The translations under genes and the position numbers were made by a program. Under the pieces are notes generated by a model that did not search any database, was not told where the DNA came from, and worked only from the letters and a program-made list of their open reading frames with translations. A DNA stretch of 64,000 nt, from the sequence record LC819008.1; one strand, written 5' to 3'. Positions within the stretch are counted from its first letter, which is position 1, and every line of letters starts with the position of its first letter. Below are positions 22,239 to 64,000 of this stretch, piece by piece.

Positions 22239-22838
22239 TTACCACAAGCTGTAACCAGCAGGTGTGTATTTGGGATTTGCCTGCCAGTCCACAATGGTTG
22301 CACCTACCTGACCATTAGGACTGGAAATGACAGGATAGTAATTGGTTTGTCCCGGCGAATAGGTCGTGAGGCTAAGTGTGCCTTCATTGACGCCATTGCG
22401 GTAATAGGTAAACTGTTTGTTGACAAAATCGACAGCCATGCCGACGTAGTCGCCTTGAGTAAACCCAGTTACACCGTAGTTAGCACGAACGTTGCTGTTG
22501 TAAATCAGCTGACTCACAGCACCTGTGCAATACCAGAAGACTTCACCGGAATTGGTGGTCCATGGCGTATTAAAAGGCGTCGTGGTTGTTCCAAGACCAA
22601 TAAGAGGGCTGTATGAAACAGAACCCTCAAACTGAGTCATGAGAACTTCAAAATACCACTTGCCTCCATTGGCAACGGCTCTGGAAAGTGTTGCAAAAAC
22701 TGAGCCGCCTGTGTTTCCGCAGTTCGCTCTCAGGTTTCCGTTTGAAACGGAAACCGAAGTAGCTTTAAGTGTTGGGCTAAAAGTCGTTGTTGTTGCTGCG
22801 ATTGTTTTCTTTTTTAACAGCAAGCTAGTTGCCAACAT
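22239..22838 (-). CDS. SPRY/B30.2-like domain protein, probably virion/tail associated
   Basis: GKWYFEV, GDYVGMAVDF, FTYYRNG, YYPVIS; N-terminal MLATSLLLKKK. Confidence 0.7.
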   Translation of the reverse strand: MLATSLLLKKKTIAATTTTFSPTLKATSVSVSNGNLRANCGNTGGSVFATLSRAVANGGKWYFEVLMTQFEGSVSYSPLIGLGTTTTPFNTPWTTNSGEVFWYCTGAVSQLIYNSNVRANYGVTGFTQGDYVGMAVDFVNKQFTYYRNGVNEGTLSLTTYSPGQTNYYPVISSPNGQVGATIVDWQANPKYTPAGYSLW

Positions 22839-22841
22839 AAA

Positions 22842-23441
22842 TCACCACCGAGAAAAGCCGGACGGAATCGGATTCACCAGGTTCGTCGTGAAGTCAACGA
22901 TCGCAGGCGAACCACCAGCATTCACGCTACATGAAACCGGATAGTACGTGTGTCCGAGGTTACTGTAAGTGGAAAGGGAGAGTTTTCCTCGCGCAGTTCC
23001 ACCAAGAATAAATTCGATCGTGTTGTTGACCAGATCCAGACAGATACCGATCACACCACCTGCACTTACGAATGTACCGTAGTTCAGACGTGCATCAGCA
23101 GCATAGCTGACCTGTGCATTATTGGGTGCGCTTCCGTAGAAGAGAACCTGATCCAGTGCGCCGCCGCCATACACGTTCGACAACCCTGTGCGTTCAGAAC
23201 AGATCCCGGTCATTGGTGCTGCGCCGCCTGACCACCCACTCTCAGTCTGGACAATCAGAATTTCGGTGTACCACTTTCCAGTAGTTTTACCGATAGTGCC
23301 GCGAGCACCTGCTCGTGAGTTGGATGCCAGCGTTGCTCGTGAATTGGTATTCGACAGCGTTACACCGGAAACTACGACAGCAGGATCCCAAGCCAGCAAA
23401 GATCCTGTCTTCTTCTTTAAAAGCAGGGAGTTGTCAAGCAT
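22842..23441 (-). CDS. SPRY/B30.2-like domain protein, tandem paralogue
   Basis: GKWYTEI, VIGICLDL, YYPVSC; likely start MLDNSLLLKKK at 23441. Confidence 0.7.
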   Translation of the reverse strand: MLDNSLLLKKKTGSLLAWDPAVVVSGVTLSNTNSRATLASNSRAGARGTIGKTTGKWYTEILIVQTESGWSGGAAPMTGICSERTGLSNVYGGGALDQVLFYGSAPNNAQVSYAADARLNYGTFVSAGGVIGICLDLVNNTIEFILGGTARGKLSLSTYSNLGHTYYPVSCSVNAGGSPAIVDFTTNLVNPIPSGFSRW

Positions 23442-23476
23442 ATAAAGCCCAGTATAATTGGTCAAAAGTCATAGAA

Positions 23477-23504
23477 TCGTACCTAGGCTTTCGCCTAGGT
23501 ACGA
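23477..23504. terminator. Hairpin terminator, 12-bp stem, GAAA loop on minus strand
   Basis: tcgtacctaggc-tttc-gcctaggtacga after the tmk stop. Confidence 0.7.
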
Positions 23505-23508
23505 GTTC

Positions 23509-24204
23509 TTAACCGATGTACTGGATGATTTCGTCGACGGATTTCTTCACTTCAGTGAAGAGGCGAGTTGCGTCAACAGTGAAAAGAGGACCCGCTTCCT
23601 GGATGCGACGCTGCGCGAATTGCAGGCGGAAATTCTGGATGAGATTCTCGAAGAATTCATCCGGTTTCGTTTCGAACGCGTCCTTCGTATTGCCGAGCGC
23701 ACTCACTCGCTCGTCGACACGAGCACGAGACGTTGCCAGATCGATGTCCAGGAAGATCGTGGCGTAGCCTTTGATCTGGCTGTAGAGCCATGCCCGCGTT
23801 TGAAGCGGATAGCCTGCCAGGATGTTGGGCAGATTCAGATGGTAGTCGAACATCTGATCACAGAGCTTCTTAGGGATTCCCTGGGTGAAGTGCTGGTACA
23901 CCCATGTCGTGTCGTTCCAACGGTCACTGATGACCACCTGGCCAGACAGAAGGGCAGGTATGATGGTCTCGACCAGTACCCGACGGCGCAGATACAGAAT
24001 GCATGACAAAACTGCCGGCATCGGGATTTTCTGATGAATCCATGCGTCCCGCATGAACGATGCTTCTTCGTCTTTCGGGTAGGCTGCCACGACGACGTTC
24101 GGAATACCCTTGGCGGTCAGGTATTCCCCGATGTGCTGCGAGATGCTGCTCTTGCCACTACCGTCGATGCCTTCAACGGTCCAGAAACGATTGTCACTTG
24201 CCAC
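23509..24204 (-). CDS. tmk: Thymidylate (dTMP) kinase
   Basis: P-loop TVEGIDGSGKSS, ISDRW motif, IFLDID, 231 aa. Confidence 0.88.
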   Translation of the reverse strand: MASDNRFWTVEGIDGSGKSSISQHIGEYLTAKGIPNVVVAAYPKDEEASFMRDAWIHQKIPMPAVLSCILYLRRRVLVETIIPALLSGQVVISDRWNDTTWVYQHFTQGIPKKLCDQMFDYHLNLPNILAGYPLQTRAWLYSQIKGYATIFLDIDLATSRARVDERVSALGNTKDAFETKPDEFFENLIQNFRLQFAQRRIQEAGPLFTVDATRLFTEVKKSVDEIIQYIG

Positions 24205-24308
24205 GATTGGTCTCCTAGTTTAACCAGGGTATCTGCCGAAAGAATAAAAAAATAAAGCAAAAAAATCCCCGGTGTTACCCGGGGAGAAAATACACGCGCC
24301 GCCGAGGG

Positions 24309-25079
24309 CTACACGCGACGCATGTAGAGACTCAGTGGCACGTAGGACGGATTCACGAAACGATACATCGCAGCGGCACTCTGTTCCTTCTCGCGGCAGT
24401 TATTCGCGAAACGAACGAAGTGCTCCAACTCGCCCTTGTTCTTGGCGGTGCCGACGTACACACTGTTCTGCTCCTTAAGCGAACTGTAGTAGACTTCGAC
24501 GCCGCCTTCTTTCGAGCGAGCATATGCCTGTACGCCATCGGGGATGATGACGTCATGCACAGTCTTGATATAGTTCCGGTTGTACTTCACCGGATACCAC
24601 AACGACTTGTTGACCTCGTCGGTGAACTGACGCAGATTCTCGAAGTAGTAGTTCGCGGCTTCCAGGACCATGTTCTTGTAGTCCGGGTTGTGGAACTCCT
24701 GCGCAATGCTACTACCGCTGAACACGCGGATAACAACCTTACGAGGACCCCGCATTACTGCGACCATTTTCGAAGGAAGAATGAAAACGCCATGGCCGGG
24801 AATGACCTTGACGCCTTCTTCTTTCTTATCAAACAACTGACGTAGCTTGCCGCGCTGGGCGAAAGCTTTCGACTGACCGAGCGCGACGTTGTACTCGCGG
24901 AATGTCTCAGCCGATACTTCTTCGTCCACGATGGGCGTGAACACGTGATTCTGACGAATGCTATTCACCCGCCATGCCTTATCGCCATAGCTGGCGTTGA
25001 TGATGGATAGGTCCGAATCAATCGGGAATTCGCGATTCAGAATACGCACTACGTTTTTGCCGACGGAGATCTGTTGCAT
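24309..25079 (-). CDS. Hypothetical protein, 256 aa
   Basis: ORF track; AAGGA RBS. Confidence 0.65.
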   Translation of the reverse strand: MQQISVGKNVVRILNREFPIDSDLSIINASYGDKAWRVNSIRQNHVFTPIVDEEVSAETFREYNVALGQSKAFAQRGKLRQLFDKKEEGVKVIPGHGVFILPSKMVAVMRGPRKVVIRVFSGSSIAQEFHNPDYKNMVLEAANYYFENLRQFTDEVNKSLWYPVKYNRNYIKTVHDVIIPDGVQAYARSKEGGVEVYYSSLKEQNSVYVGTAKNKGELEHFVRFANNCREKEQSAAAMYRFVNPSYVPLSLYMRRV

Positions 25080-25113
25080 GTCGATTTTATCCTTACGTTT
25101 TGAAAGTTGAAGC

Positions 25114-25851
25114 TTAAGCTGCGTTGGTGCTTACATCTTCAGAGTTTGCTGCTTCCAGGCTTTCGCCCGATGCTGCTTTTTGGCGAGCCTTGATGATGCA
25201 GATCGCCATGTCCACGGCCACCAGGAAGTGGGCGTGAGAGGTTTGGTACGGATTCTTCGGAACAGAAACCGTACTGGCCAGCCGTCGCGGATCGCCTGCT
25301 TCTTCATAGCTTTCCAGCGGAGCAGTCGTCTGATACGCGTCGATCATTTCCTTGGTAGCGGCGATGACCGAATCGACCCAGACATACTTCTTCTTCCATG
25401 CTGCCTTGTAATAGCGCTTGGCATCTTCAACCGAATAGCCGGCATTGGCGAGAGTCGCCAGACAGCCTTGTTCGAAGATTGCCCGCGTACGGACAGACAG
25501 CGGAATCGCGACGATTGTGCGGCCGACTTCTTTTTCATCTTGCTTGCGGATATTGACGCGCAGGTCCCATTCACCGAGTCGGTGGGGAACGCGGCTCCAA
25601 CCGTGGAAGAACTGTACCAGGTCCTTCTGGCGTCCTTCAGACACGATCCGTTCGATTTCTGCTACAGCCGCTTCGTCGGCGGCAGATGCGAGAGGTGCAG
25701 GGGCTACCCGATGTGCAGGACGATGGGTCGCATGGTTGTTTCCTCCACGACTGAAGGTCGAGGTGTGCGGCCGGTGACGTTGGCCTTCTGTGGATTGGGG
25801 CGTCTTATTCTTGTTGCCGCCGAATCGATGTGCCATGTTGAGATAAGTCAT
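25114..25851 (-). CDS. Hypothetical protein with basic disordered N-terminus
   Basis: Start MTYLNM at 25851 after GGAG RBS; early-type motif upstream. Confidence 0.65.
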   Translation of the reverse strand: MTYLNMAHRFGGNKNKTPQSTEGQRHRPHTSTFSRGGNNHATHRPAHRVAPAPLASAADEAAVAEIERIVSEGRQKDLVQFFHGWSRVPHRLGEWDLRVNIRKQDEKEVGRTIVAIPLSVRTRAIFEQGCLATLANAGYSVEDAKRYYKAAWKKKYVWVDSVIAATKEMIDAYQTTAPLESYEEAGDPRRLASTVSVPKNPYQTSHAHFLVAVDMAICIIKARQKAASGESLEAANSEDVSTNAA

Positions 25852-25948
25852 AATGACTCCCAAGACATAATTTTGGTAAGCGAGGAATTCGCTTGTTTTA
25901 ACCAACAGAACAGAACCCAGCAAAAGTTTTAGCCGGAAATTCATTTTG

Positions 25949-25957
25949 ATTATATAT
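25949..25957 (-). promoter_or_regulatory. Putative early promoter motif ATATATAAT
   Basis: Recurring motif in an AT-rich intergenic region. Confidence 0.5.
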
Positions 25958-26015
25958 TGTTGATTTTTTCTGCATTATATCTGAACGCTACACAAATAAA
26001 AACAGACATAGACCA

Positions 26016-26043
26016 ATACCAGAAGCCTTGCGGCCTCTGGTAT
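26016..26043. terminator. Hairpin terminator, GCAA loop on minus strand
   Basis: ataccaga-a-gcc-ttgc-ggc-c-tctggtat. Confidence 0.65.
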
Positions 26044-26045
26044 CG

Positions 26046-26600
26046 TCATTTCTTTTGCTGTTGATTACTAGGCGTTTGAGCGAGCAGCTTCTCCAACTTC
26101 TGAATGGCGCCGTTTCCGGCCCCCAGGAGCTTGGCACTATGCTTCTTCGCCGAGTTAATCACCTTCAGGAAATCGCGTCGAGGATAACGAATTAACTCAT
26201 CGAAGGAAAACCCGAAGATTTCGTGCACCTTGTTTTCGGCAAACTGGTCGAGACGGAAGTCAAACGGGTCCACACGAGCCAGATCCTCAAGCGGCGAGCA
26301 GAATAACAGGGGCCATGGAACGTTCTTGAAGTCGTCCGGTCCGTCGTGATTGTAGATACCGAATGCGGTTTCGTACTTCATCCGCATGAACAACTCCGCG
26401 TCCACCACATTGGGTAGTTTGGCGTTGGTCATGGCTTCCAGAATCACGTTGACCGGAGACCTGCCCCTGTCTTCTATTCTCGCCAACTCGGGTTCTAGTC
26501 CGATGTGTCCTCCAGACTCCTCGATGAGAGTCCAAGCAACTTCTGCTCGACCAGCTGAAAAAAAACCGAAACCGCATCGAGTGCGATCAGGCGCGGCCAC
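26046..26600 (-). CDS. Conserved hypothetical protein; true start probably downstream of 26495 (e.g. ATG 26432)
   Basis: ORF track; the first 106 nt overlap the upstream gene. Confidence 0.55.
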   Translation of the reverse strand: MAAPDRTRCGFGFFSAGRAEVAWTLIEESGGHIGLEPELARIEDRGRSPVNVILEAMTNAKLPNVVDAELFMRMKYETAFGIYNHDGPDDFKNVPWPLLFCSPLEDLARVDPFDFRLDQFAENKVHEIFGFSFDELIRYPRRDFLKVINSAKKHSAKLLGAGNGAIQKLEKLLAQTPSNQQQKK

Positions 26601-28021
26601 TTGTCGCCGGACAGGGTGTCCTCGTACTCGTTGACCGAAGTCGTCGCAATGATTGCGACTTGCGTGTTGTTGATGTAGTCGCTGATCGCCTTGAAGAACT
26701 TCCGGGAGATCTCGTCGGAGGCCGAGAGGGACACGAGCACCTTGTCCACGTTTTCACGCGTGGTATAGAGCTCGCCATCTTCTTCGATAGCCTTGACGTA
26801 GTGCGAGTACTGGCGCAGACGGGAAGCCTTAGCCAATTGGCTGATGTACTGCATGCGCTTCTGGTCGGTCGCTTCCGCGCCAAGAGCTTCGTGAACCGCG
26901 GCGTTGATCTCGTTGATCCACTTCTCGCCGGTGTCGAAGTACTCGCGCAGATTCGGCGTATACAGATGCAGCTTCACACCTTCGCCGATTTCGACCACCG
27001 TGTTCTGGTTGAAGACGAACTGGTCCTTGTAGTCCTTGATCGTCTTGAGCGTCATCGGCGCTTCGATGCGCTTGACCATGTGTGCCAGTTGCTCTTCCTT
27101 GAACATTTTGGCGTTCATGAAGAGACACTTGCGCAGGTCGATGATCTGGTGCAGTTCTTCCTTCGGCAGCTTCGTATCTTCCGTGAAGACAGCCCGCGAC
27201 ATCGGGAAGCCGTTCGGATAGATCGAGGATGCGACCGACAGAGCGATCAGCGGCAGATCGTTCACGGTGATGTGATCGACCAGGTTTTCCTTGGGCAGAT
27301 CGTTGACCGTCGTTTCGATCAGCGAGCCGACCCATGCTTCGAAAACAGCCTTGGCCGTGAAGACCGAGTTGTTCGCGAACATGAGACCGTGCGTGGCCCG
27401 GCCGAGCTTGATCGGTTCAGCGATGATGGTACGCCACAGGCCGATGATGTCGTATTCTTCCAGCGGCTTCACAGTCGCATAGAAGCCCGAACCAACGAGC
27501 GGAACCTGTACCGGCGAACCCAGACCCAGACGCGCACGAACCGACAGGTTCAAACGCTCCGAGCTCATCTTCGCGCCACGTCCCTTATTCGTGAACTTGG
27601 GACGACCGACGTTGACGTTCTGGCCTGCGTAGTTCAGAGCGTTGCGCCATTCGGCATTCGGGTCAGCGAGCGCATCTTCGAACACGCCATGAGCCGGAAC
27701 CGAACGGAAGCCGTTGAGCAGCGTCTGATACCAGTTCACCGCATCTTCGTTGACGTCGACTTCGCCCATCTTGGTCGCTGTCATGTCGTCGTTGATACGG
27801 CTTGCCGAATCAGGCAGAAGAGGAACCAGGATATCCTGGAACTTCTTCAGTTCTTCTTCGCAGGGAGCAGGCGACATCAAGTCGGTCTTGCTTTCCCAGT
27901 TCTTTGCTTGCTTGGGCACCTCGACGGTCTGCGGGTCGATACTGACCTGCGTTTCGTCGGGCATGTGAAGCTCGGGCTCGTCACCCGAGCCGCCCTGGTT
28001 GTCTTCAGGAGCGATTGCCAT
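26495..28021 (-). CDS. Conserved phiKZ-like core protein, 508 aa (function unclear; baseplate-assembly factor is a guess)
   Basis: AAGGA RBS, strong codon bias, acidic N-terminus. Confidence 0.6.
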   Translation of the reverse strand: MAIAPEDNQGGSGDEPELHMPDETQVSIDPQTVEVPKQAKNWESKTDLMSPAPCEEELKKFQDILVPLLPDSASRINDDMTATKMGEVDVNEDAVNWYQTLLNGFRSVPAHGVFEDALADPNAEWRNALNYAGQNVNVGRPKFTNKGRGAKMSSERLNLSVRARLGLGSPVQVPLVGSGFYATVKPLEEYDIIGLWRTIIAEPIKLGRATHGLMFANNSVFTAKAVFEAWVGSLIETTVNDLPKENLVDHITVNDLPLIALSVASSIYPNGFPMSRAVFTEDTKLPKEELHQIIDLRKCLFMNAKMFKEEQLAHMVKRIEAPMTLKTIKDYKDQFVFNQNTVVEIGEGVKLHLYTPNLREYFDTGEKWINEINAAVHEALGAEATDQKRMQYISQLAKASRLRQYSHYVKAIEEDGELYTTRENVDKVLVSLSASDEISRKFFKAISDYINNTQVAIIATTSVNEYEDTLSGDKWPRLIALDAVSVFFQLVEQKLLGLSSRSLEDTSD

Positions 28022-28033
28022 GTAGCTGGTTCC

Positions 28034-28795
28034 TTAGATGCTGATCAGGCCAGAGCCAACGCGCGGATCCACGTCGTTCGGTTCGGCGGCTTTCGTCGTG
28101 TCGACGTCGAAGTCGGTGGGACGACGGCCTTCAGCCGGCTGGTTGATGATTTCCGACGGTTTGAGTGCATCTTCGCCATCGGCGCTGATACCTTCCATGC
28201 CTTCGGCCGGAGCTTCGACTTCCTTCGCTGCTTGCGGAACGTCGCCTTCGTCGAGGATGGCGACTTCCTGGCCGGCAGCACGCGCAGCTTCGATCTGTTC
28301 GACCGTCAGTGCGTCTTGCGCTTCGAGCAGTTCCTTGAGCGCCTTGTTGTAGATCAGGTTCAGCGCGCCGATGATCGGCTGGAACTTGTTGAAGAGGTCG
28401 ATGTCGAATGCCTGATAGGCTTCGAAGATGCGATACGCTTTCGAGAGCTCTTCGTAGCTCAGGCACAGCTTACGGATGTGGCCGTGGCTGTCCCAGAGAG
28501 CCTGGAATTCCTTGGCCATTTCGGCGACGAGCGGCTGGATCTTCGCGATTTCGGCGTCGAACGCTTCCTTCTCGCCGTTCTTGGCGACCTTCATCAGCAC
28601 GACCGGGTGGTTGTACTGTGCGAACAGTTCAGCCAGCTTGTTGATGTTCTTCTGGCTGCGTTGGTGAACTTCTTTCAGCTGATACCAGCAGCGGGAGGTC
28701 TTCTCGCGATCGAACGATTTCTTGCCGCTCGTCATGCCGGCTGCTGCGCGGCGTTCTGCGTCTTTCTGACGACGGCTTGCGGATTTTTGCGTCAT
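28034..28795 (-). CDS. Hypothetical helical protein with acidic C-terminus, 253 aa
   Basis: ORF track; biased codons. Confidence 0.65.
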   Translation of the reverse strand: MTQKSASRRQKDAERRAAAGMTSGKKSFDREKTSRCWYQLKEVHQRSQKNINKLAELFAQYNHPVVLMKVAKNGEKEAFDAEIAKIQPLVAEMAKEFQALWDSHGHIRKLCLSYEELSKAYRIFEAYQAFDIDLFNKFQPIIGALNLIYNKALKELLEAQDALTVEQIEAARAAGQEVAILDEGDVPQAAKEVEAPAEGMEGISADGEDALKPSEIINQPAEGRRPTDFDVDTTKAAEPNDVDPRVGSGLISI

Positions 28796-28891
28796 TTGTC
28801 ATATCCCCAGTAGGAATTTTAGATGGTTCACCAGACGATAACTTCAGGTAAATAAAAAAGTATTTATTTACTCTGTTGTGTAGATCCTCTG

Positions 28892-34420: not shown

Positions 34421-35671
34421 TTACGGTTGAAGCGAGTCGGTTTGATCAGCAGCTGCTGCGCCGTCCGCATCAGCCTTCACGTCGGTAGCCGCCGGCGTTT
34501 GGACTTCTGCTTGAACAGCAGCATCTGCGACTTCAGCGGTCGGGGCAACGTCGGCGGGAGCAGCGACTTGTTCAGCCGTTGCGTCCACTGCCGGCGTTTC
34601 CGCGGCCGGAACTTCTGCCTGCGCTTGTGCGGCGTCGGTTTCCACCGGCGCAGCCGTTTGCGCTGCGTCAGCAGCTTGTTCCACCGGAGCAGCGTCGACA
34701 GGTGCGCCAGTCAGTGCTGCAGCCGTTTCCGGATCTGCATTCACTTCGGGCGTTTGTGCCAGAGCTTCGGGCGAGTGATCGACTTCTTGCGAGGTCAGAT
34801 CCGCCGGAGCAGCTGCTTGTTCCACAGCGGGAGCTTCAGCTTGAGCAGCATCGGCTGCCGGTGCTTCCACTTGTGCTGCGGCATCGACGGCCGGAGCCGT
34901 TTCTACCGGTACTGCTTGCTCACCAGTGGCGGGGTCGACTTCCGGGGCAGCTTCTTGAGCCACGCCTTCGTCGGCTACGCCGGCCGGTTGAGCTTGTTCA
35001 GCAGCAGCGTCTTCCGTACCAGCTGCAGCTTGGGCCGGAACTTCGGCTTGTGCATTTGCTGCGGGAGCGTCGACTTGCGGAGCTGCGTCAGCCGGGGCTT
35101 GAGCTTGCGCTTCGCCTGCGGTCGGGTCCACTTCTGCTACTGCGGGTGCTTCCGGAACTGCCGGGGTTTCCGGTTGTGCCGGTGCATCTGCGGGCTGTTC
35201 CACTGCCGGTGCAGCTTGTTCAGCCGTACCTGCATCCGTGCCCGCTGCCGGATCTTGTTCGACGGCCGGAGCATCGCCCGTCGGTTGTGCTTCTGCGGTG
35301 CCAGCGTTGTCGACCGGTGCTGCATCTGCGGGAGCCGCGTCAGCAGGTGCCGGATCTTGAGCTTGATCACCAGCGGCCGGAGCCGCGTCTTGCGATTGGT
35401 CGCCAGCTGCGATCTGGTTGTCCAGAGCAACTGCTGCTGCGCCAGCGGCTGCGGCGGCTGCCGTACCGTTGTCGCCCAGACCGAGAGCTTCGTTCGTGGT
35501 GTCGCCGAGCGGTGCTTCGTCGCTTGCCGGCGGGACGATCGGATGGTCTTCCTTCTTCTTGTGGAAGATGCCGACGATACGTTCGACCACGTGTTCGGGC
35601 AGGGAGGCCAGGGCTTCGATCGCCAGGATTTCGGTCTTCAGTTCATCGAGAACTTTGTGGATGATGCTCAC
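34421..35671 (-). CDS. Acidic Ala/Pro/Gln/Glu/Asp-rich low-complexity protein, 416 aa
   Basis: GTG start after AAGGA; about 40-aa helical N-terminus, then a disordered repetitive tail. Confidence 0.75.
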   Translation of the reverse strand: MSIIHKVLDELKTEILAIEALASLPEHVVERIVGIFHKKKEDHPIVPPASDEAPLGDTTNEALGLGDNGTAAAAAAGAAAVALDNQIAAGDQSQDAAPAAGDQAQDPAPADAAPADAAPVDNAGTAEAQPTGDAPAVEQDPAAGTDAGTAEQAAPAVEQPADAPAQPETPAVPEAPAVAEVDPTAGEAQAQAPADAAPQVDAPAANAQAEVPAQAAAGTEDAAAEQAQPAGVADEGVAQEAAPEVDPATGEQAVPVETAPAVDAAAQVEAPAADAAQAEAPAVEQAAAPADLTSQEVDHSPEALAQTPEVNADPETAAALTGAPVDAAPVEQAADAAQTAAPVETDAAQAQAEVPAAETPAVDATAEQVAAPADVAPTAEVADAAVQAEVQTPAATDVKADADGAAAADQTDSLQP

Positions 35672-35755
35672 GATTTTTCCTTGAAAGGAGTGTTTTAAAA
35701 GTACTGCTTGACCAGCAAAAACGTTGTTACTGGCTCATACAATTTCGGTCGATTT

Positions 35756-36153: not shown

Positions 36154-36498
36154 TTAGTTACCTAATGAATCCAGGATCTTCCGAGCCTCAGACGGTTTCC
36201 AGCAATCCCGTCCGTACACCTGCTTCAGAAGTTCAAAGGACTCGTAGTACTCCGGATCCCACTGATCCTCAAGGCCGAAGCACGAGCAGTGCGATCCGTA
36301 CACATCGAAGAATTGCTTCTTCTCATGGTCGTAACCAAACACCACCGAGGATCCAGAATAATCTTCGTACGTATACCCTGCGTACAGGATTTGGTATTTC
36401 GGATCATCCTCGACGTTGAACTCACGAAAGACATCTTCGCGGCAATCAAATTCGTCGTGGAAAACGGGTTCTTTAGACAACAGGATAGCTTCAGTCAT
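36154..36498 (-). CDS. Hypothetical phage protein with GSHCSCFGLEDQW motif (start 36498 or 36549)
   Basis: YTYEDYSG and GSHCSC motif recalled from other phage proteins. Confidence 0.65.
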   Translation of the reverse strand: MTEAILLSKEPVFHDEFDCREDVFREFNVEDDPKYQILYAGYTYEDYSGSSVVFGYDHEKKQFFDVYGSHCSCFGLEDQWDPEYYESFELLKQVYGRDCWKPSEARKILDSLGN

Positions 36499-57772: not shown

Positions 57773-59403
57773 TAGTGCAGTGTCCTCGTATTAAACATTT
57801 TGTGCATCCGCGCCAGCTTAGCTGGGTCGGGTCTGCGAGCTTGTTCGCTGTAGTTGTACAGGTGATTCACCACCGACGACACGATCGGTTTGGGCAACGG
57901 CATGTTGTCGCCGATCTTGCGCGGGCCGGACAGTTTCCACGCACCGAAGTGCGGCGCCAGATAACGGAGTTCATCCGTCGTCCAGTTGTCCATGGTCAGG
58001 AAGCCGAACATCTGATCGCCATCGAAGTCAGCATTCGGGCCAGCCACCGAAATGATCGGATAGCTGATCGACATGATCTTCGGATTGGTCTTGATCTTGG
58101 TCACGAACATCCGCTGGATCGAAGTACGATACATGGACGGATTGCGACCGAAGATAACCGGAATACCACGGCGAACTTTGATCTCGCGAAGCTCGATCTC
58201 TCCATTCTCCAGATACTTCGGTTTCATCTGACCATCGACAATCGAAGCTTCGATTGTCGGCGACAGTTCGTACGGCGACTCATCCAGAAGCTCGTCGAAG
58301 AGTTCTTCGAGCAGCGGATGATGGACGTGCGTATGCGCATTCAGAAAGTACGATGCGTCGTTGTGGCCAAAACCACGACGGAACAACTTACCCATCAAGT
58401 GCAGACGGAACGTCGTTACTGCCAGAGCCCACGGCAGGTGAATCTCGTCATGGTGATGCGGCTCCGTGAGCGAATTGATAACCGCACGGAAGCTGAACCA
58501 ACAGCGAGTTGCGTAAACGTGTTTCCGTACCAGGCCAGGTTTGCCGGCGATGAAGTTCTTTTCGTAATCACGCCCGAACTCGGACAATGCTTCCGAAAAC
58601 TTGGACGCACGGTTTTCCTTTTGGGCAACCGTATAGTCCTTGATATCGCTGTCGATACCGGAGATGTTCCGGACGGCATCGATAATCGTCTTCAACGTCG
58701 TATCCATGTAAGTACCGAACTTGGTGTTCTCGATCACCAGGATGGTCTTGTTGTGCACAGGTACGTGTTGCGAGAAGATGCGATCGCGATACATTGCGAT
58801 AAAGATCTGCATCTCCCTGAGTTTCTCCTTCTTGTCTCTCGTGGAACTGAATTGTGGAAATTCACAAAGCTGACCGATGATCCAGTCAAAGTTGTGATAG
58901 AAGAAGTTCAGCCCGCGCTCGATGCGGCGGTTTTCCAGTTCGTCCATCCACCGACCATGATGCTGGCGATTCGGACGATAGTCCGTATTCGTCAGATACT
59001 TGATGATGTTGAATTTCTGGTTGCTGTTGTTCGAGAGACTGAAGAAGTCCGACAGCAGACGCCAAGCCTGAGGATTGATCAGTGCATCGACGCCTTTAGG
59101 CGCTTCAACCCAGATGATGGGCTCAAGCGGTTTATCCAACACAGCCTGAACCGGCTGCTTACATTTTCGACAGACGGTCCCCTTACCGTTTCTGTCTACG
59201 TGATGCTGACCGAACGTATGCCCACACGAACATTTCGGAATCGTGTCAAGCAGATCGGTATCGTTGTACGTCACGAAGAAGTTTTCGTCGAAGGCCGACT
59301 TCTCCGTTTCCAGCGTGTCCAGTACCTTATTGACGATGATGGGGTCTGATGTTATCTGCGAGAATAACTCGTCATAGTTTTGCATTTCCAAATGTGTGCC
59401 CAT
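57772..59403 (-). CDS. Non-virion RNA polymerase beta' subunit, N-terminal/catalytic part (phiKZ gp55-56-like)
   Basis: CSCG and CRKC Zn finger, GKPGLVRKHV, GRNPS, catalytic NADFDGD; GGAGG RBS before 59403. Confidence 0.92.
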   Translation of the reverse strand: MGTHLEMQNYDELFSQITSDPIIVNKVLDTLETEKSAFDENFFVTYNDTDLLDTIPKCSCGHTFGQHHVDRNGKGTVCRKCKQPVQAVLDKPLEPIIWVEAPKGVDALINPQAWRLLSDFFSLSNNSNQKFNIIKYLTNTDYRPNRQHHGRWMDELENRRIERGLNFFYHNFDWIIGQLCEFPQFSSTRDKKEKLREMQIFIAMYRDRIFSQHVPVHNKTILVIENTKFGTYMDTTLKTIIDAVRNISGIDSDIKDYTVAQKENRASKFSEALSEFGRDYEKNFIAGKPGLVRKHVYATRCWFSFRAVINSLTEPHHHDEIHLPWALAVTTFRLHLMGKLFRRGFGHNDASYFLNAHTHVHHPLLEELFDELLDESPYELSPTIEASIVDGQMKPKYLENGEIELREIKVRRGIPVIFGRNPSMYRTSIQRMFVTKIKTNPKIMSISYPIISVAGPNADFDGDQMFGFLTMDNWTTDELRYLAPHFGAWKLSGPRKIGDNMPLPKPIVSSVVNHLYNYSEQARRPDPAKLARMHKMFNTRTLH

Positions 59404-59456
59404 CCAACCTCCTTCAAAGCACGATTGTAAAAGATTTCTACTGCAGTATCCAATAG

Positions 59457-59465
59457 ATGATATAT
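59457..59465 (-). promoter_or_regulatory. Putative early promoter motif ATATATCAT
   Basis: About 55 nt upstream of the beta' start. Confidence 0.55.
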
Positions 59466-59564
59466 CGGTATACTTTTTTACATATAGAGACATCTATATA
59501 AAAAAACATACGGATAGATCAAAAGAAAAATCCGCAAGACTCGCTGGATTTTCCTCGACTGTCC

Positions 59565-59837
59565 TTAGTGGACAGTTGCCAATTGGAGTGGTTCCGATTG
59601 GTTGACGGTACGGTAGAGTGCTGCTTGTGTTGCATTGAGGTCATTCAGTTTCCGACGTCCGTAATCGTTTTCGATCATGAACATCGCTGTTGCAATTTCC
59701 ACAACCGGTATTTCAGGAAAAGCTTGCATGACTGCGAGAGTTGCTTCTCGAATCGTTTTACCTGCATCACGCTCTTTGTAATAAGCTTCGCGAATGTTAC
59801 CGAAACTCAGGAGAGCGGAACTTCTTATTGTGTTCAT
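59565..59837 (-). CDS. Small hypothetical protein, 90 aa, between chimallin and RNAP beta'
   Basis: ORF track; GAGAACTGAG upstream of ATG 59837. Confidence 0.5.
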   Translation of the reverse strand: MNTIRSSALLSFGNIREAYYKERDAGKTIREATLAVMQAFPEIPVVEIATAMFMIENDYGRRKLNDLNATQAALYRTVNQSEPLQLATVH

Positions 59838-59867
59838 CTCAGTTCTCAAGTTGACGGCAAAAAAGAA

Positions 59868-59899
59868 AATAGAGAGAGTCCCGAAGGACTCTCTCTATT
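59868..59899. terminator. Chimallin gene terminator, 14-bp stem, UUCG loop, U tract on minus strand
   Basis: aatagagagagtcc-cgaa-ggactctctctatt. Confidence 0.8.
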
Positions 59900-59930
59900 C
59901 AGTGGGTTACTACTGGCTTACGCCGGCAGC

Positions 59931-61877
59931 TTACCAGCGGTTGTCGTTGCGATCGGCGCGATCGTAGTAACGATCGTCGTAACGGTCACGCGACTGACGC
60001 TGATTGCGATACAGACCACCGCTACCCGGACGGGCCAGGATCGTATCGATGTTGCCATACGTGGTGCGATAGCGATCGCTGCCATCGCGGCTGCTCGACG
60101 TCGGGTTGAGCGACAGCTTGCAGCGGCTGATTGCTTCGATCAGCGCTTCGTCGAAACGGGTATCCCAGTTGTAACGCTGGAAGAAGCCCGTGATGACGGC
60201 GGTCGGCACGAAGTCACGGATGATTTCGTAGCGTTCCGATTGCGACAGCGTGTTGTCGTCGTTCGAAGCTGCGGCCATGCCCCATTTCTGGATCAGGAGC
60301 AGGTCGTCTTCCTTTTCCGGACGCAGCATGTTCAGCAGCGCCAGATAGTCGAAGTCGCGCAGGTCGAGACGCATGCCGCGATCGCCTTCCGTGTAGTAAC
60401 CGCCATGGATCCGCTCGACGTGGCTGTCGAGGATCGGTTCCGTACGGTCGTACAGGTCTTCGAAGTGACCGTCGGTCAGCACGCAGCACGCGTCGTAGAT
60501 GCGATCCATTGCCTTCTGGCTGCCTTGCGCAGCTGCCATCAGGTCGACATGTTGCCAGGTCGAGGAGCCGCATTCCGGCACGTCGATCGAGTGGATCACG
60601 CCGGGACGCACGGTCGTACGCAGCAGAGCCTGACGCTTCGCAGCGGTGAAGCTCGCGTTCTTCGTTTCCCAGCGCTCGCCGAAGCCGCGTTCCAGATCCT
60701 GGAGGTTGGGTTCGATGGCCAGCGCGCCGATGTTGCGCATGTCGTCTTCACCGACCGAGAGGTTCGGTTCGAAGGCACGCATGATCTCGGCCGATTCACC
60801 AACCGCATGAGCCGTCGCGTGAGCGAGCATCATGGTCGTCGGCGAGAAGTCGACGGTGTCGGTGAACGTGTTGATGAAGCGCAGTGCGTACAGCTGGCAT
60901 TCTTCGCTGCGACGATCGCCACGACGAGCGTACAGATCGTTGCGGCTCGACGCGCCGTCGGCCGGAGCGTAGACGAAGTCGAAGTAGCCGCCGACACGCG
61001 AGATGCGAGTGCCGGTAACCAGCTGGTCGATCGGGTCGCGGCTGTTACGGCCACGGTTTTCGCGCGAGACGAGATCGATGATCATGTCAGCACGGACCGG
61101 CAGATGGCCACGATCGTAGATGTGGTTCTGGCGGTGCTGGATGTGCACGCTGTTGAAGCTGTCGTCGTCGGACTTCAGGCACAGCTGAGGCGCGTCCGGA
61201 TCGTTGCGATCGATGGCCGTCTTGATGGCAGCGAACGAGTTCTTCACGCAATCGGCGATTGCCTGCGGATCGTCCTTGGCGGTCGGGAAACCACCGTAGA
61301 TGACTTCGGCATCTGCCGTGTACAGGTTTTCGTTCGGATACGCGTTGCCCAGAACTTCCTTCACGACGTCGCGAACCTTCGAGTCGTAGCCGTCGCCCGG
61401 CACTTGCACGACCGTCACGCGATTGCCGCGATAGCTTTCTTCACGCGGACGCAGCTCTTCGGCCGAGCCGGCGAGCAGGAACGTGTGATAGCCGACGCCC
61501 AGCTTTTCCTTGCCACGCTTCTTGCCTGCGATGACGATGCAGGAGAACGGAATGCCGGCGACCGATGCGTCGATCGGGAACACCTGGCAGTCCAGCATGT
61601 TGTTGTCGGTCTTGGCCGGCATGGCTTCCACGAAGTCACGACGGAACACTTCGAGCGCTTCCGCCGTGCCCGTCATTGCGATCGGGGTCGGGTTCATGCG
61701 GCCGATGTTGCTCAACGATGCCGTACGGATAGTGCCGCTGGAGCGGCTTTCGTCACGGCGCGACGAGCGTTCTTCTTGTGCACGATCTTCTTGTTCGCGG
61801 CGGCTGCCACCTTGCTCTTGCGCACGGCGCATTGCGTCACGGACTTGCGATTGCTGATCTTTGCCTTCGATGCTCAT
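59931..61877 (-). CDS. chmA: Chimallin (phage nucleus shell protein)
   Basis: 648 aa; upstream of nvRNAP beta' N-terminal gene as in phiKZ gp54/gp55; exact TATATTAC promoter; strong codon bias; AGGA RBS before 61877. Confidence 0.8.
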   Translation of the reverse strand: MSIEGKDQQSQVRDAMRRAQEQGGSRREQEDRAQEERSSRRDESRSSGTIRTASLSNIGRMNPTPIAMTGTAEALEVFRRDFVEAMPAKTDNNMLDCQVFPIDASVAGIPFSCIVIAGKKRGKEKLGVGYHTFLLAGSAEELRPREESYRGNRVTVVQVPGDGYDSKVRDVVKEVLGNAYPNENLYTADAEVIYGGFPTAKDDPQAIADCVKNSFAAIKTAIDRNDPDAPQLCLKSDDDSFNSVHIQHRQNHIYDRGHLPVRADMIIDLVSRENRGRNSRDPIDQLVTGTRISRVGGYFDFVYAPADGASSRNDLYARRGDRRSEECQLYALRFINTFTDTVDFSPTTMMLAHATAHAVGESAEIMRAFEPNLSVGEDDMRNIGALAIEPNLQDLERGFGERWETKNASFTAAKRQALLRTTVRPGVIHSIDVPECGSSTWQHVDLMAAAQGSQKAMDRIYDACCVLTDGHFEDLYDRTEPILDSHVERIHGGYYTEGDRGMRLDLRDFDYLALLNMLRPEKEDDLLLIQKWGMAAASNDDNTLSQSERYEIIRDFVPTAVITGFFQRYNWDTRFDEALIEAISRCKLSLNPTSSSRDGSDRYRTTYGNIDTILARPGSGGLYRNQRQSRDRYDDRYYDRADRNDNRW

Positions 61878-61980
61878 TTTAGTGCTTTCCTGTTTTGGAA
61901 GAAATGAAAAGTAGATACGCGTACCAGAATTAGTCACGTACGATAAAGAATTGATCGCATTACTAACGCAGATCAACTTT

Positions 61981-61989
61981 GTAATATAT
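61981..61989 (-). promoter_or_regulatory. Early promoter ATATATTAC upstream of chmA
   Basis: Contains an exact match to the phiKZ early consensus TATATTAC. Confidence 0.7.
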
Positions 61990-62178
61990 CAATGAAATTT
62001 ATTTAAATCGCACGATATACCACAGCACGCGAACATAGGTGCTACAACATGCAGACGTTGTCATCTGCACAGTATAGGGGTAAAACAATAACTTTTTATT
62101 TCCCAGTACTTTGTCCCTGTCGCATGTTCATGCTATGACTACGATTGCTAGAAAATTACCTAATACGGATGTGTTCGC

Positions 62179-63258
62179 ATGCTCAGCATCTTCAACGACC
62201 TTCAACCCAGGATGAAAGGTATCATCAGCTTTCCTGAATGGACATTCATTCGGGACGGTCTGATGATGAACCTGGACCACACCAACAAGTATTACCGCAG
62301 TGGTGCTTATGCGGTAGGTTCCGATCACGAACTGGTCAAGTTGTTGTTCGGTTTGACAACCAGTACGGATGAAGAACTCGCCACCTATTACAAACGCGTT
62401 GATGCAAAAGCATTGACGGTTGCTCAGCAATTGGGATTCACGACTTCTATCAGTAAGGGACACATGTTCAACAATGTGTTCTTCTCAGGTAAGAGTCGAG
62501 AAGTCATCATCGTTCATAACGAAGACTTCGACCCCCAGCAAGTTACGGAGAACTGGCGTGATGCTCGTCCGATTCAAATCCTGCGTCATGGCTTTGACTT
62601 CATCGATTGTTTTCCTATGCAAGGGCAGCTGGAAAGCTCTGGAGTCAGCTGCTTCGCCATCAATCTGTCCATGCTCGGCGTGCAGTATCGAGCGTATCGC
62701 CAATGGCAAAAAAGCTACGTAACAGAAGAGACAGGTCGTAATTCGGTCTATCACTTCCTGTTTGCGTATCCGTTGAACAACATGATTTATGACGCAATGG
62801 ATCATGCGGTGTTTAACCGTTTGGTGCGTCTGAATCAAGATCTACCTACAAGCGACAATCAGTATCGTCATCCGTTTCATGTGACGAACTTCGTGGGTCG
62901 TGTGGATCGAATCCTGGGGAAAGTTCTCGATACACTTCGAAACAATCCTCTTGACTTTTACAACATCTGCGCCACGATCCCTCTGATCAATCAGGGCAGT
63001 TTGCTGGATCTCCTGAAGCTTCCGGACATCTACGAATCGCGGCAAATCAACTGGGCTATTTACATGGCTCGGATCGATATGCTGTTGTTCCTCCTGAGTT
63101 TCGATAACAATCTGAAGATGATGAATCAAAGCGAACTGAGTAAGATCAAGTACGCACTGAAGCTGTATCTGAAGGATGGTACGATTCAGTCTGCAGTACC
63201 GCGCGATCTGTTCGGCAAACAAAAGATCGTCATCGAACGACTGGTTGAAAAGATGTGA
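62179..63258 (+). CDS. Conserved protein divergent from chimallin (phiKZ gp52/53 position, possibly virion)
   Basis: 359 aa; synteny. Confidence 0.6.
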   Translation: MLSIFNDLQPRMKGIISFPEWTFIRDGLMMNLDHTNKYYRSGAYAVGSDHELVKLLFGLTTSTDEELATYYKRVDAKALTVAQQLGFTTSISKGHMFNNVFFSGKSREVIIVHNEDFDPQQVTENWRDARPIQILRHGFDFIDCFPMQGQLESSGVSCFAINLSMLGVQYRAYRQWQKSYVTEETGRNSVYHFLFAYPLNNMIYDAMDHAVFNRLVRLNQDLPTSDNQYRHPFHVTNFVGRVDRILGKVLDTLRNNPLDFYNICATIPLINQGSLLDLLKLPDIYESRQINWAIYMARIDMLLFLLSFDNNLKMMNQSELSKIKYALKLYLKDGTIQSAVPRDLFGKQKIVIERLVEKM

Positions 63259-63259
63259 A

Positions 63260-63295
63260 CATATACCACTCTGGCTTACGCCAGAGTGGTATATG
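63260..63295. terminator. Bidirectional hairpin terminator, 16-bp stem, GUAA loop on minus strand
   Basis: catataccactctggc-ttac-gccagagtggtatatg between convergent genes. Confidence 0.8.
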
Positions 63296-63298
63296 GGC

Positions 63299-64000
63299 TT
63301 ATGGGTCTGGTGTGAAATTCGACGTGTATTTCGCGTAACTGTACATCTTGAAGTTATCAAGGTTTCCAATCCACGGGAACTCGGTCGTCGCGCCATTGGC
63401 TGTTTCAGAAATACAACCGATGGTCAGTATCTTCGTATTCAGTGAAAAAGCGGAAGCATTGAAAGTTGTACTTCCGTTCGCAACACCATTCTGATAGATG
63501 GTGAAGACATTACCCTGCTTAACGAACGCAGCATGGTATTTGGTATTCAGGTTGAAACTGTTCGTGGCACCAACGATGGTCAAATGGTTATCGTTTTGTC
63601 CGACGCTATAAAACAGCCCAAGCTTCTGGGAACGTCCAGTTGCATAAAGGGCATAGCCGTTATCGTTGTGATTTCCAAACGTGAAGAAGACAGCTTGACC
63701 AAAGTTGCCTTGCTTCAGATTGTAAAAATAGAATTCGAATGTGAAATCACTGACGAACGGATTAAAATTCCAAGGCGTCGTATCTGTTCGAAGATACGTT
63801 GTCGCCGGAGTAACGTTTGTCGATGCAAACAATGCATTCTGGGATCCAGACAATGCAGGCGTGCTCGCGAGTGTTACTCCTGTGTTTGTGATCGGCCACG
63901 CGTTCGGGCTCTTGTCTGTGAAGTCGCCTTCAAAATCAAGATTCAAGAGCGCTGGCGGTGTAGCTATTTTCTTTTTATAAAGGAGATTGGCACCTAGCAT
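63299..64000 (-). CDS. LamG/concanavalin A-like lectin domain protein, probably virion/tail associated
   Basis: DFTFEFYFY, KYHAAFVKQGNVFTIYQNG, WIGNLDNFKM; N-terminal MLGANLLYKKK; ATG at the window edge. Confidence 0.72.
   Translation of the reverse strand: MLGANLLYKKKIATPPALLNLDFEGDFTDKSPNAWPITNTGVTLASTPALSGSQNALFASTNVTPATTYLRTDTTPWNFNPFVSDFTFEFYFYNLKQGNFGQAVFFTFGNHNDNGYALYATGRSQKLGLFYSVGQNDNHLTIVGATNSFNLNTKYHAAFVKQGNVFTIYQNGVANGSTTFNASAFSLNTKILTIGCISETANGATTEFPWIGNLDNFKMYSYAKYTSNFTPDP

What the first reader, a model, noticed from the sequence alone, without database searches (positions are those of the whole stretch)
22239..64000. Shared N-terminal tag ML-x3-LL-x-KKK on different beta-sandwich domains
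Seen: MLATSLLLKKKT (start 22838, SPRY), MLDNSLLLKKKT (start 23441, SPRY) and MLGANLLYKKKI (start 64000, LamG). Each tag is followed by a short Thr/Ala/Pro linker and an unrelated or divergent binding domain, and the genes lie 40 kb apart. Inference: a modular docking or addressing peptide that loads interchangeable adhesin or effector domains onto one virion site (or another compartment), forming a plug-in receptor-binding system.
Basis: partly seen in the sequence, partly recalled or inferred. Interest (0 to 1): 0.65.

Follow-up and report, generated by a model that had tools for sequence, protein, structure and literature searches.

The report
Shared tag on jumbo-phage binding domains
A jumbo phage of plant-pathogenic Ralstonia and Burkholderia puts the same 11-residue peptide at the start of about ten small sugar- or protein-binding proteins of unrelated folds, which most likely docks them all onto one site, probably on the virus particle, though that site is not yet shown.

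Summary
The window is the last 64 kb of Ralstonia phage FLC4-4C (genus Chiangmaivirus, an RSL2-like, nucleus-forming jumbo phage). ML-x3-LL-x-KKK occurs three times in the six-frame translation, each time at the first ATG of an ORF; about 4e-5 are expected and none appeared in 200 shuffles.

A looser form, M-[LQH]-[DE]-x-x-L-L-x-K-K, heads ten 158-248 aa proteins across the whole genome. Their domains are SPRY, LamG, F5/8 type C (discoidin) and one unassigned. A Gly-rich domain carries the full tag in the relative SURPRISE13.

- Tag identity between paralogues is 56%, against 18% for the rest of the protein.
- The Leu and Lys positions use varied synonymous codons, so selection acts on the peptide.
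- AlphaFold2 leaves residues 1-19 unstructured ahead of a confident SPRY fold.
- The strict tag is confined to this lineage, but looser hydrophobic N-termini head related SPRY proteins in the tail modules of small phages.

The best reading (about 0.45) is a docking peptide like those of secondary receptor-binding proteins in branched tailspike systems. Virion incorporation and the partner protein are inferred, not shown. I rate it a new variant of a known kind.

The parts
22239..22838 (-). Tagged SPRY gene (FLC4-4C gp198), 199 aa. It is the second gene of a two-gene tagged array.
   Evidence: ORF. Pfam SPRY E 1e-9. phrog_10080 E 2e-53, aligned from profile position 2. The GenBank CDS covers only 22239-22517.
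22806..22838 (-). 11-residue tag of gp198 (MLATSLLLKKK).
   Evidence: The AlphaFold2 mean pLDDT over residues 1-10 is 59, with no secondary structure.
22782..22805 (-). Thr/Ala-rich linker of gp198 (residues 12-19).
   Evidence: Coil in the AlphaFold2 model; the first strand begins at residue 20.
22242..22781 (-). SPRY beta-sandwich of gp198 (residues 20-199).
   Evidence: AlphaFold2 mean pLDDT 94, pTM 0.88. Foldseek against PDB gives SPRY/B30.2 domains at TM about 0.73. BFVD matches include phage tail fibre, lectin and structural proteins.
22842..23441 (-). Tagged SPRY gene (gp199), 199 aa counted from the ATG at 23441. It is the first gene of the array.
   Evidence: Pfam SPRY is weak at 5e-3; phrog_10080 gives 5e-35. 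GenBank starts the gene at 23399.
23409..23441 (-). 11-residue tag of gp199 (MLDNSLLLKKK).
23469..23502 (-). GNRA-loop hairpin just after the thymidylate kinase stop, followed by TATGA 28-32 nt upstream of the gp199 ATG. This is a terminator plus a promoter-like motif.
   Evidence: The same arrangement of hairpin, then T[AG]TGA, then about 24-35 nt to the ATG precedes the other tagged gene units and also terminase gp25, internal head protein gp187, gp42 and gp66. Promoter function is inferred.
22239..23450 (.). Divergence island that coincides with the two SPRY genes.
   Evidence: DNA identity to FLC8 and RSL2 falls from about 90-97% in the flanks to 20-87% per 30-nt window (mostly 30-70%). 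The fall begins at the gp198 stop and ends at the gp199 tag. The tags are retained in FLC8 and RSL2.
63299..64000 (-). Tagged LamG gene (gp242), 233 aa. It is the last gene of a three-gene tagged array (gp2-gp1-gp242) that crosses the record end.
   Evidence: GenBank starts it at 63853. The SURPRISE13 orthologue (69% identity) is annotated with the tag.
63968..64000 (-). 11-residue tag of gp242 (MLGANLLYKKK).
63332..63796 (-). Laminin_G_3 (concanavalin-like) domain of gp242, residues 69-223.
   Evidence: Pfam E 1.3e-12. The PHROG matches are domain-level and fall in families annotated as virion structural protein.

Best explanation
The tag is an N-terminal docking peptide. Its consensus is M-[L/Q/H]-[D/E]-x-x-L-L-x-K-K-[K/A/S]. 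A short flexible linker joins it to a single binding domain, which may be SPRY, LamG, discoidin, Gly-rich or another fold.

All ten or so tagged proteins of the phage would use this peptide to bind the same kind of site on a shared partner. The Leu pair would sit in a hydrophobic pocket and the Lys pair against an acidic surface. The partner is most probably a fibre or baseplate component of the virion, so the particle would display a replaceable set of small adhesins.

Shown: the tag exists, it is selected as a peptide, it lies outside the fold, it heads non-homologous domains, and it stays constant while the payloads turn over.

Inferred: that it binds a partner, that the partner is in the virion, and that the payloads bind host surface structures.
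For: - **Number and selectivity.** There are ten tagged ORFs in FLC4-4C. PSSM scores are cleanly bimodal, 31-36 against 12.7 or less, although the ten were also the training set. In the independent genome SURPRISE13 seven ORFs score 22-35 and four more 6.8-16. Two further SURPRISE13 genes carry the tag if an internal or GTG start is read as the start.
- **Payloads.** They belong to SPRY, Laminin_G_3, F5_F8_type_C and Gly_rich_2.
- **Tag conservation.** Pairwise identity is 56% in the tag against 18% in the rest, higher in 45 of 45 pairs. L6 and L7 each use five Leu codons and K9 and K10 use both Lys codons across 20 genes.
- **Structure.** Residues 1-19 are a coil of low confidence ahead of a high-confidence SPRY fold.
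- **Turnover.** The SPRY genes form a sharply bounded divergence island between phages that are about 96% identical, and the tags are kept. Copy number and payload at the tagged loci differ between FLC4-4C and SURPRISE13.
- **Link to fibres.**
  - The discoidin payload is 48.6% identical to the C-terminus of FLC1-1B gp154. That gene lies two genes downstream of a collagen-like tail fibre gene and has a similar N-terminus, MLEFLLGGK.
  - The fibre and the gene next to it are homologous to FLC4-4C gp176 and gp175.
  - Neighbouring FLC1-1B genes match PHROGs annotated as virion structural protein.
- **Distant relatives.** Some 190-aa SPRY homologues with hydrophobic N-termini sit at the end of the tail modules of small phages.
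- **Fold neighbours.** Among viral proteins these include tail fibre, lectin, structural and minor tail proteins.
- **Expression signal.** The hairpin plus T[AG]TGA motif is shared with the terminase and internal-head-protein genes.
- **Precedent.** N-terminal docking peptides of 7 to 11 residues attach secondary receptor-binding proteins in K1-5/SP6-like and Klebsiella phages. The KP34 group heptapeptide MALxxLV is one example. This docking has been validated experimentally (PMC6872550; PMC13352976).
Against: - No proteomic or structural evidence places any tagged protein in the virion. The RSL2/RSF1 proteomics paper is not in the library.
- None of the tagged genes carries the 'virion structural protein' label in the GenBank records.
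- The genes are scattered among replication and nucleotide-metabolism genes rather than lying in a tail cluster.
- Pfam found no T4 gp10-like branching domain in ten fibre and baseplate candidates.
- The payloads are small single domains, unlike trimeric tailspikes.
- The docking itself could not be modelled, because no multimer prediction was available.
- SPRY is mainly a protein-binding fold, which would suit an intracellular role equally well.
Confidence: 0.45

Rival explanations
1. The tag is an intracellular address. It brings a set of binder domains to a shared non-virion partner or compartment in the infected cell. That could be a membrane surface, reached through the hydrophobic-plus-polybasic character of the tag, or a phage- or host-encoded hub. 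The payloads would then act in host takeover or counter-defence.
For: - The genes lie among replication and nucleotide-metabolism genes, and in other jumbo phages the SPRY homologue sits alone between such genes.
- SPRY is a classical protein-protein interaction fold.
- Rapid turnover also suits arms-race genes.
- The tag is a short hydrophobic stretch followed by Lys residues.
Against: - LamG, discoidin and Gly-rich domains are typical of extracellular or virion-surface binding, and their phage relatives are tail, baseplate or structural proteins.
- Related proteins sit in tail modules.
- AlphaFold2 predicts no amphipathic helix.
- The promoter-like motif is shared with terminase and an internal head protein.
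Confidence: 0.2
2. The tag is a capsid-targeting or cargo peptide. It would load the proteins into the head or tail lumen for ejection into the host, like the short N-terminal targeting sequences of T4 internal proteins (own knowledge).
For: The tag is a short N-terminal peptide shared by unrelated small proteins of a phiKZ-like phage that has an elaborate internal head. The internal-head-protein genes are at window 6648-9380. The promoter-like motif is shared with one of them.
Against: - No conserved acidic cleavage site follows the tag. The first 40 residues of gp198 and gp199 contain no Glu at all. The protease preference for Glu is own knowledge.
- Lectin-like domains are not typical ejected cargo.
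- No homology to internal head protein families was seen.
Confidence: 0.08
3. The tag is a relic of common descent with no function of its own. It would be a leader kept because the genes arose by duplication, and spread to other domains by chance recombination.
For: - SPRY and LamG are related folds, and several genes are tandem duplicates.
- The strict tag is confined to one phage lineage.
- A 24-nt identical stretch across the tags of gp2 and gp61 hints at gene conversion.
Against: - A neutral relic would not stay at 56% identity while the rest of the protein falls to 18%.
- It would not keep Leu-Leu and Lys-Lys through many synonymous changes.
- It would not persist on non-homologous discoidin and Gly-rich domains, or across phages of two host genera.
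Confidence: 0.1
4. The conserved element is nucleic acid rather than peptide: a translation-initiation enhancer, an A-rich slippery site, or a recombination microhomology that overlaps the start codon.
For: - The Lys run is A-rich.
- Some copies contain an A AAA AAG string.
- Shine-Dalgarno sequences are weak.
- The 24-nt identity between gp2 and gp61.
Against: The codons at the conserved positions vary freely: five Leu codons at each Leu position and both Lys codons. The slippery-like string is absent from most copies. Amino acids are conserved where bases are not.
Confidence: 0.05

Closest known systems
Conserved N-terminal docking peptides of secondary receptor-binding proteins in branched RBP systems (K1E/K1-5/SP6; Klebsiella KP32, KP34, Menlow and PhiK64-1 groups)
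   Same: - A peptide of 7 to 11 residues at the extreme N-terminus, with conserved hydrophobic positions.
- It is shared by different specificity proteins of one phage.
- It is specific to the lineage.
- It sits in front of fast-evolving, exchangeable payloads.

Docking onto a branching domain has been shown experimentally for KP32, K11 and KP34 (PMC6872550; PMC13352976).
   Different: - The payloads here are small single beta-sandwich domains of 158-248 aa, not trimeric beta-helix depolymerases.
- There are about ten per genome.
- The genes are scattered over 225 kb of a nucleus-forming jumbo myovirus.
- The tag carries a Lys cluster, whereas the Klebsiella peptides are described as lacking positive charge.
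- No T4 gp10-like partner was found.
- Virion attachment is untested.
Capsid targeting sequence of phage T4 internal proteins (own knowledge)
   Same: A short N-terminal peptide shared by otherwise unrelated small proteins. It acts as an address during virion assembly.
   Different: - The T4 peptide is removed by the prohead protease after a Glu; no such site follows the tag here.
- The payloads here are lectin-like binding domains rather than ejected effectors.
Stand-alone phage SPRY proteins of about 190 aa with a short hydrophobic N-terminus (metagenomic family found)
   Same: - Same architecture: N-terminal peptide, short linker, SPRY domain.
- Several members lie at the distal end of tail modules or, in other jumbo phages, as solitary genes.
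- The window SPRY genes are members of this family (E down to 1e-75).
   Different: - The N-termini of distant members keep only a hydrophobic Leu-rich core (for example MQQLLLAAKK or MLRRLLLAD).
- The strict tag with its Lys pair, and its use on non-SPRY folds, is seen only in the Chiangmaivirus lineage.
Cohesin-dockerin plug-in assembly (cellulosome; own knowledge, functional analogy only)
   Same: One conserved small docking element is placed on many different binding or catalytic modules so that all of them load onto a common scaffold.
   Different: - A dockerin is a folded domain of about 70 residues at the C-terminus.
- There is no sequence or structural relation.
- No scaffold has been identified here.

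Membership tests
Branched RBP system with docking peptide | A short conserved peptide at the extreme N-terminus, shared by different specificity proteins of one phage. | tested here: met
   Ten ORFs in FLC4-4C, and seven strong plus four weaker in SURPRISE13; two more in SURPRISE13 with alternative starts. Tag identity is 56% against 18% for the rest.
Branched RBP system with docking peptide | A partner protein with a T4 gp10-like branching domain. | tested here: inconclusive
   Pfam found none in ten fibre and baseplate candidates. Only Pfam was used, only ten proteins were scanned, and remote homology was not explored.
Branched RBP system with docking peptide | The peptide-bearing proteins are components of the virion. 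| not testable with these tools
   No proteomics for these proteins was accessible. The only support is indirect, from gene context and fold neighbours.
Branched RBP system with docking peptide | The genes interrupt a conserved structural-gene synteny as divergent cassettes. | tested here: inconclusive
   The cassettes are divergent with sharp borders. However, the flanking genes are DNA polymerase and thymidylate kinase, not tail genes.
Pfam SPRY (PF00622) | Score above the gathering threshold, and a SPRY fold. | tested here: met
   gp198 scores 38.9 bits against a cut-off of 26.3. The AlphaFold2 model matches solved SPRY domains at TM about 0.73. gp199 scores only 17.3 bits but is a clear paralogue through phrog_10080.
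Pfam Laminin_G_3 (PF13385) | Score above the gathering threshold. | tested here: met
   gp242 scores 48.6 bits against a cut-off of 27.6.
T4-type capsid targeting sequence | A protease cleavage site directly after the N-terminal address peptide. | tested here: not met
   No conserved acidic residue follows the tag, and gp198 and gp199 have no Glu in their first 40 residues. The requirement for Glu is own knowledge.

The most novel reading that the evidence does not exclude
Chiangmaiviruses would carry a peptide-addressed adhesin array. One lineage-specific 11-residue address would load ten or more interchangeable lectin-like domains, of at least four folds and encoded all over the genome, onto a single repeated site of the virion. 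The long collagen-like fibre module shared with FLC1-1B-type phages is one candidate for that site. This would give the particle a combinatorial binding surface and could help explain the cross-genus (Ralstonia/Burkholderia) activity of these phages. A second N-terminal module of 45 residues on neighbouring genes may be another part of the same apparatus.
Probability: 0.3. Interest if true: 0.75.

Novelty: new variant of a known kind. Interest (0 to 1): 0.58.

Why it matters
The receptor-binding proteins of these phages are unknown. The SURPRISE13 paper says so explicitly: that relative depends on the flagellum, and its binding proteins remain to be identified.

A shared address peptide gives a simple sequence rule for listing the whole candidate adhesin set of a jumbo phage, including genes that lie far from the tail cluster and genes whose starts are misannotated.

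If the docking reading holds, short-peptide docking would extend from podovirus tailspikes to small lectin-like modules on a nucleus-forming jumbo myovirus. It would also point to a hub protein that remains to be found.

The finding also corrects the start codons of at least four genes in the public record.

Tried and rejected
- **Pattern scans of IMG/VR for the back-translated tag.** The hits were almost all out-of-frame chance matches in AT-rich DNA. Only RSL2-type contigs carried a real tagged ORF.
- **The same pattern in bacterial genomes.** Only chance hits and an internal motif of a Comamonadaceae aminopeptidase-like gene appeared. There is no sign of mimicry of a host signal. This scan was also truncated.
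- **The search for homologous proteins with gp242.** It returned only two relatives.
- **Search for a T4 gp10-like partner.** None was found.
- **Idea that the fibre C-terminus of gp176 is homologous to the phiTE_241_C-type protein next to a small-phage SPRY gene.** Not supported (BLASTP E 0.61; no Pfam hit).
- **Frameshift idea from the A AAA AAG string.** The string is present in only some copies.
- **Variovorax and Synechococcus phage LamG hits that aligned from residue 2-10.** The Variovorax phage locus that I read does not carry the tag; in the Synechococcus phage only the feature table was checked.
- **Literature.** No virion proteomics covers these proteins. The RP31 supplements had no relevant entry, and the RSL2/RSF1 paper is not held.

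Full report
**Identity of the window.** The window is 100% identical to Ralstonia phage FLC4-4C (LC819008.1), positions 161072-225071, so the window end is also the record end. Close relatives are FLC8, FLC6, RSL2, RSF1, RsoM3USA and Burkholderia phage SURPRISE13, genus Chiangmaivirus. These are phiKZ-related jumbo phages with a chimallin-like shell protein and a tubulin, so they presumably form a nucleus.

**The observation.**
- ML.{3}LL.KKK occurs three times in the six-frame translation. About 4e-5 are expected, and 200 dinucleotide shuffles gave none.
- Each hit is the first ATG of its ORF.
- For the gene at 64000 the upstream sequence continues at the start of the record. Only 3 nt separate its ATG from the stop codon of gp1. 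The gene order in SURPRISE13 confirms this join.
- Pfam gives SPRY for the gene at 22239-22838, a weak SPRY for the gene at 22842-23441, and Laminin_G_3 for the gene at 63299-64000.
- GenBank starts all three genes downstream of the tag, and its gp198 CDS covers only the C-terminal 92 residues, about half of the SPRY fold.

**The full set.** I read the rest of the genome locus by locus. A looser pattern found ten tagged ORFs of 158-248 aa and one false hit.
- They form six units: gp2-gp1-gp242 (one array across the record end), gp61, gp85, gp86, gp99-gp98, and gp199-gp198.
- Their domains are SPRY (gp1, gp198, gp199), Laminin_G_3 (gp2, gp61, gp85, gp98, gp242), F5/8 type C (gp86) and none detected (gp99).
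- gp97 has a degenerate tag on a Gly_rich_2 domain. Its SURPRISE13 counterpart has the full tag.
- A position-specific score matrix built from the ten tags separates them cleanly from all other Met positions in FLC4-4C (31-36 against 12.7 or less), but this comparison is circular because the ten were the training set.
- In the independent SURPRISE13 genome the matrix finds seven strong tags and four weaker ones. Two more appear if an internal or GTG start is read as the start.
- SPRY and LamG are related concanavalin-like folds. Discoidin and the Gly-rich domain are not related to them, so the tag is not simply inherited together with one fold.

**Peptide or nucleic acid.**
- In the ten-protein alignment the tag is the most conserved 11-column stretch. 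Pairwise identity is 56% there against 18% elsewhere, and higher in all 45 pairs.
- Across 20 tagged genes from four phages, M1, K9 and K10 are invariant and L6 and L7 are Leu in 19 of 20.
- L6 and L7 each use five different Leu codons, and K9 and K10 use both Lys codons. Selection is therefore on the amino acids.
- An A AAA AAG string occurs in only some copies, so a frameshift signal is unlikely.

**Structure.** AlphaFold2 was run on a 60-sequence alignment. It gives a confident SPRY fold for residues 20-199 (mean pLDDT 94, pTM 0.88). Residues 1-19 have no secondary structure, and residues 1-10 have a mean pLDDT of 59.
- The fold matches solved SPRY/B30.2 domains.
- Among viral models it matches the RSL2 orthologue, and then tail fibre, lectin, structural and minor tail proteins.
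- The architecture is tag, flexible linker, binding domain.

**Turnover.** Against FLC8 and RSL2, DNA identity drops from about 90-97% to 20-87% per 30-nt window, mostly 30-70%. The drop begins at the stop of gp198 and ends at the tag of gp199. The replaced SPRY genes keep the tag. Other tagged genes are nearly identical between the same phages. Copy number and payload at the tagged loci differ between FLC4-4C and SURPRISE13.

**Distribution.**
- Back-translated tag patterns found a true tagged ORF only in RSL2-type contigs of IMG/VR and none among the bacterial genomes returned.
- An exhaustive phmmer search with gp198 found 363 relatives. Many are 190-200 aa proteins with a Leu-rich hydrophobic N-terminus, a short linker and the SPRY domain.
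- The contexts of six of these were read.
  - Two are solitary genes among replication genes, one on a contig of about 310 kb and one on a contig of about 109 kb.
  - One is the syntenic gene of a 218-kb Chiangmaivirus-like contig with a variant tag.
  - Two sit at the distal end of small-phage structural modules. One of these directly follows a tail protein (phrog_1101, E 7e-211) and a tail-fibre-like protein.
  - One contig was too short to be informative.

**Link to a fibre module.**
- The discoidin domain of gp86 is 48.6% identical to the C-terminus of FLC1-1B gp154.
- FLC1-1B is an unrelated 290-kb Ralstonia phage. There gp154 (LamG plus discoidin) and gp153 follow a collagen-like tail fibre gene (gp156) and gp155. 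They start MLEFLLGGK and MLELLLMSGGG. A third gene 24 kb away starts MFELLLSTR.
- gp156 and gp155 are homologous to FLC4-4C gp176 and gp175.
- gp151-153 match PHROGs annotated as virion structural protein. RSL2 carries homologues of them next to its SPRY genes.
- Two otherwise unrelated jumbo lineages therefore share both the fibre module and proteins with N-terminal tags. This is the main, still circumstantial, reason to place the docking site on the virion.

**Expression signal.** Five tagged gene units are preceded by T[AG]TGA about 24-33 nt before the ATG; three of the six units (gp2, gp61, gp199) also show a terminator-like hairpin upstream, and the gp2 unit carries a TGTGA variant that the regex missed. 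The regex hits that lie before an annotated gene start include terminase gp25, internal head protein gp187, gp97, gp162, gp174 and gp212; inspecting upstream regions also showed the motif before gp42 and gp66. It does not precede the major head or sheath genes. phiKZ late promoters are reported to be very short motifs (own knowledge), so this fits late expression but does not prove it.

**Interpretation.** The closest known mechanism is the conserved docking peptide of secondary receptor-binding proteins.
- These are N-terminal peptides of 7 to 11 residues with conserved hydrophobic positions. They attach tailspikes to a T4 gp10-like branching domain (PMC6872550). The mechanism has been validated experimentally for KP32, K11 and KP34 (PMC13352976).
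- The present system differs in payload type, number, genomic dispersal, the Lys cluster and the lack of a detectable gp10-like partner.
- I therefore rate the docking reading at about 0.45, an intracellular address at 0.2, and the other rivals lower.
- SURPRISE13 depends on the flagellum and its receptor-binding proteins are unidentified. The tagged set is a reasonable candidate list.

**Limits.** No multimer modelling and no proteomics were available. Only two complete genomes of the genus were scanned. PHROG and GenBank labels are annotations, not experiments.

I also declare a slip.

Noticed in passing
window 22239-22517, 22842-23399, 63299-63853; record LC819008.1 62366-62965 (gp61): The GenBank CDS starts of four tagged genes lie downstream of the conserved tag. 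The gp198 CDS as annotated covers only the C-terminal 92 residues, about half of the SPRY fold. The RSL2 RefSeq and SURPRISE13 annotations include the tag.
   Followed up: yes
L004:34242-34931 (gp84), L004:12979-13509 (gp62); L128:36433-38390 (SURPRISE13 gp87, gp88): There is a second shared N-terminal module. The first 45 or so residues, with repeated G-x-W-K motifs, are common to gp62 and gp84 (phrog_36019 and phrog_25859 cross-match over positions 1-45). The C-terminal parts differ, and gp84 and gp88 show an ILEI-like domain. Both genes lie directly downstream of a tagged LamG gene (gp61, gp85).
   Followed up: partly
window 20091-22187 (+): The DNA polymerase part gp197 starts MDNILLLNKRNK. 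This resembles the tag but scores below the matrix cut-off. It is conserved in FLC8, RSL2 and SURPRISE13 and is probably a coincidence.
   Followed up: partly
window 36154-36498 (-): gp215 (114 aa) starts MTEAILLSKEPVF. It is the best-scoring non-member in the tag matrix (12.7). It could be a decayed tag or chance.
   Followed up: no
L003:627-1307 and L004:12306-12965 (gp2, gp61): A 24-nt stretch across the tag is identical in gp2 and gp61, although the proteins are only about 19% identical. Possible causes are gene conversion, or use of the tag as a recombination microhomology.
   Followed up: no
window 7978-7982 (-), 23469-23473 (-); record 18511, 62282, 85679, 85686, 96792, 99117, 147381, 154823, 194931: A hairpin followed by T[AG]TGA about 24-35 nt before the ATG recurs upstream of a subset of genes: the tagged units, terminase, internal head protein gp187, gp174, gp162 and gp212. 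This is a candidate phage promoter class. Many other genes instead have a T-run upstream.
   Followed up: partly
L214:4245-7285 (RSL2 ORF183-185); L126:4515-7572 (FLC1-1B gp151-153): RSL2 carries a three-gene cassette between thymidylate kinase and the next conserved gene. The cassette is absent from FLC4-4C and homologous to genes of the FLC1-1B fibre cluster. A metagenomic relative (L224) has the cassette with a tag-like start (MHEALLAAGAAK).
   Followed up: partly
window 59931-61877 (-): This is a homologue of the phage-nucleus shell protein; the SURPRISE13 orthologue is annotated as a putative nuclear shell protein. The tubulin gene lies elsewhere in the genome. The element is therefore a nucleus-forming phage.
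   Followed up: no
window 6648-7958, 8064-9413, 13417-16356, 34421-35698: Long mirror ORFs lie on the strand opposite to annotated genes and are nearly co-extensive with them. They are probably shadow ORFs caused by codon bias rather than genes.
   Followed up: no
window 22839-22841 and record junction 225071/1-3: Both tandem junctions (gp199 to gp198, and gp1 to gp242) read TGG TGA, then 3 nt, then ATG. An SPRY gene ending in Trp is followed after 3 nt by the next tagged gene, which suggests a duplicated unit.
   Followed up: no
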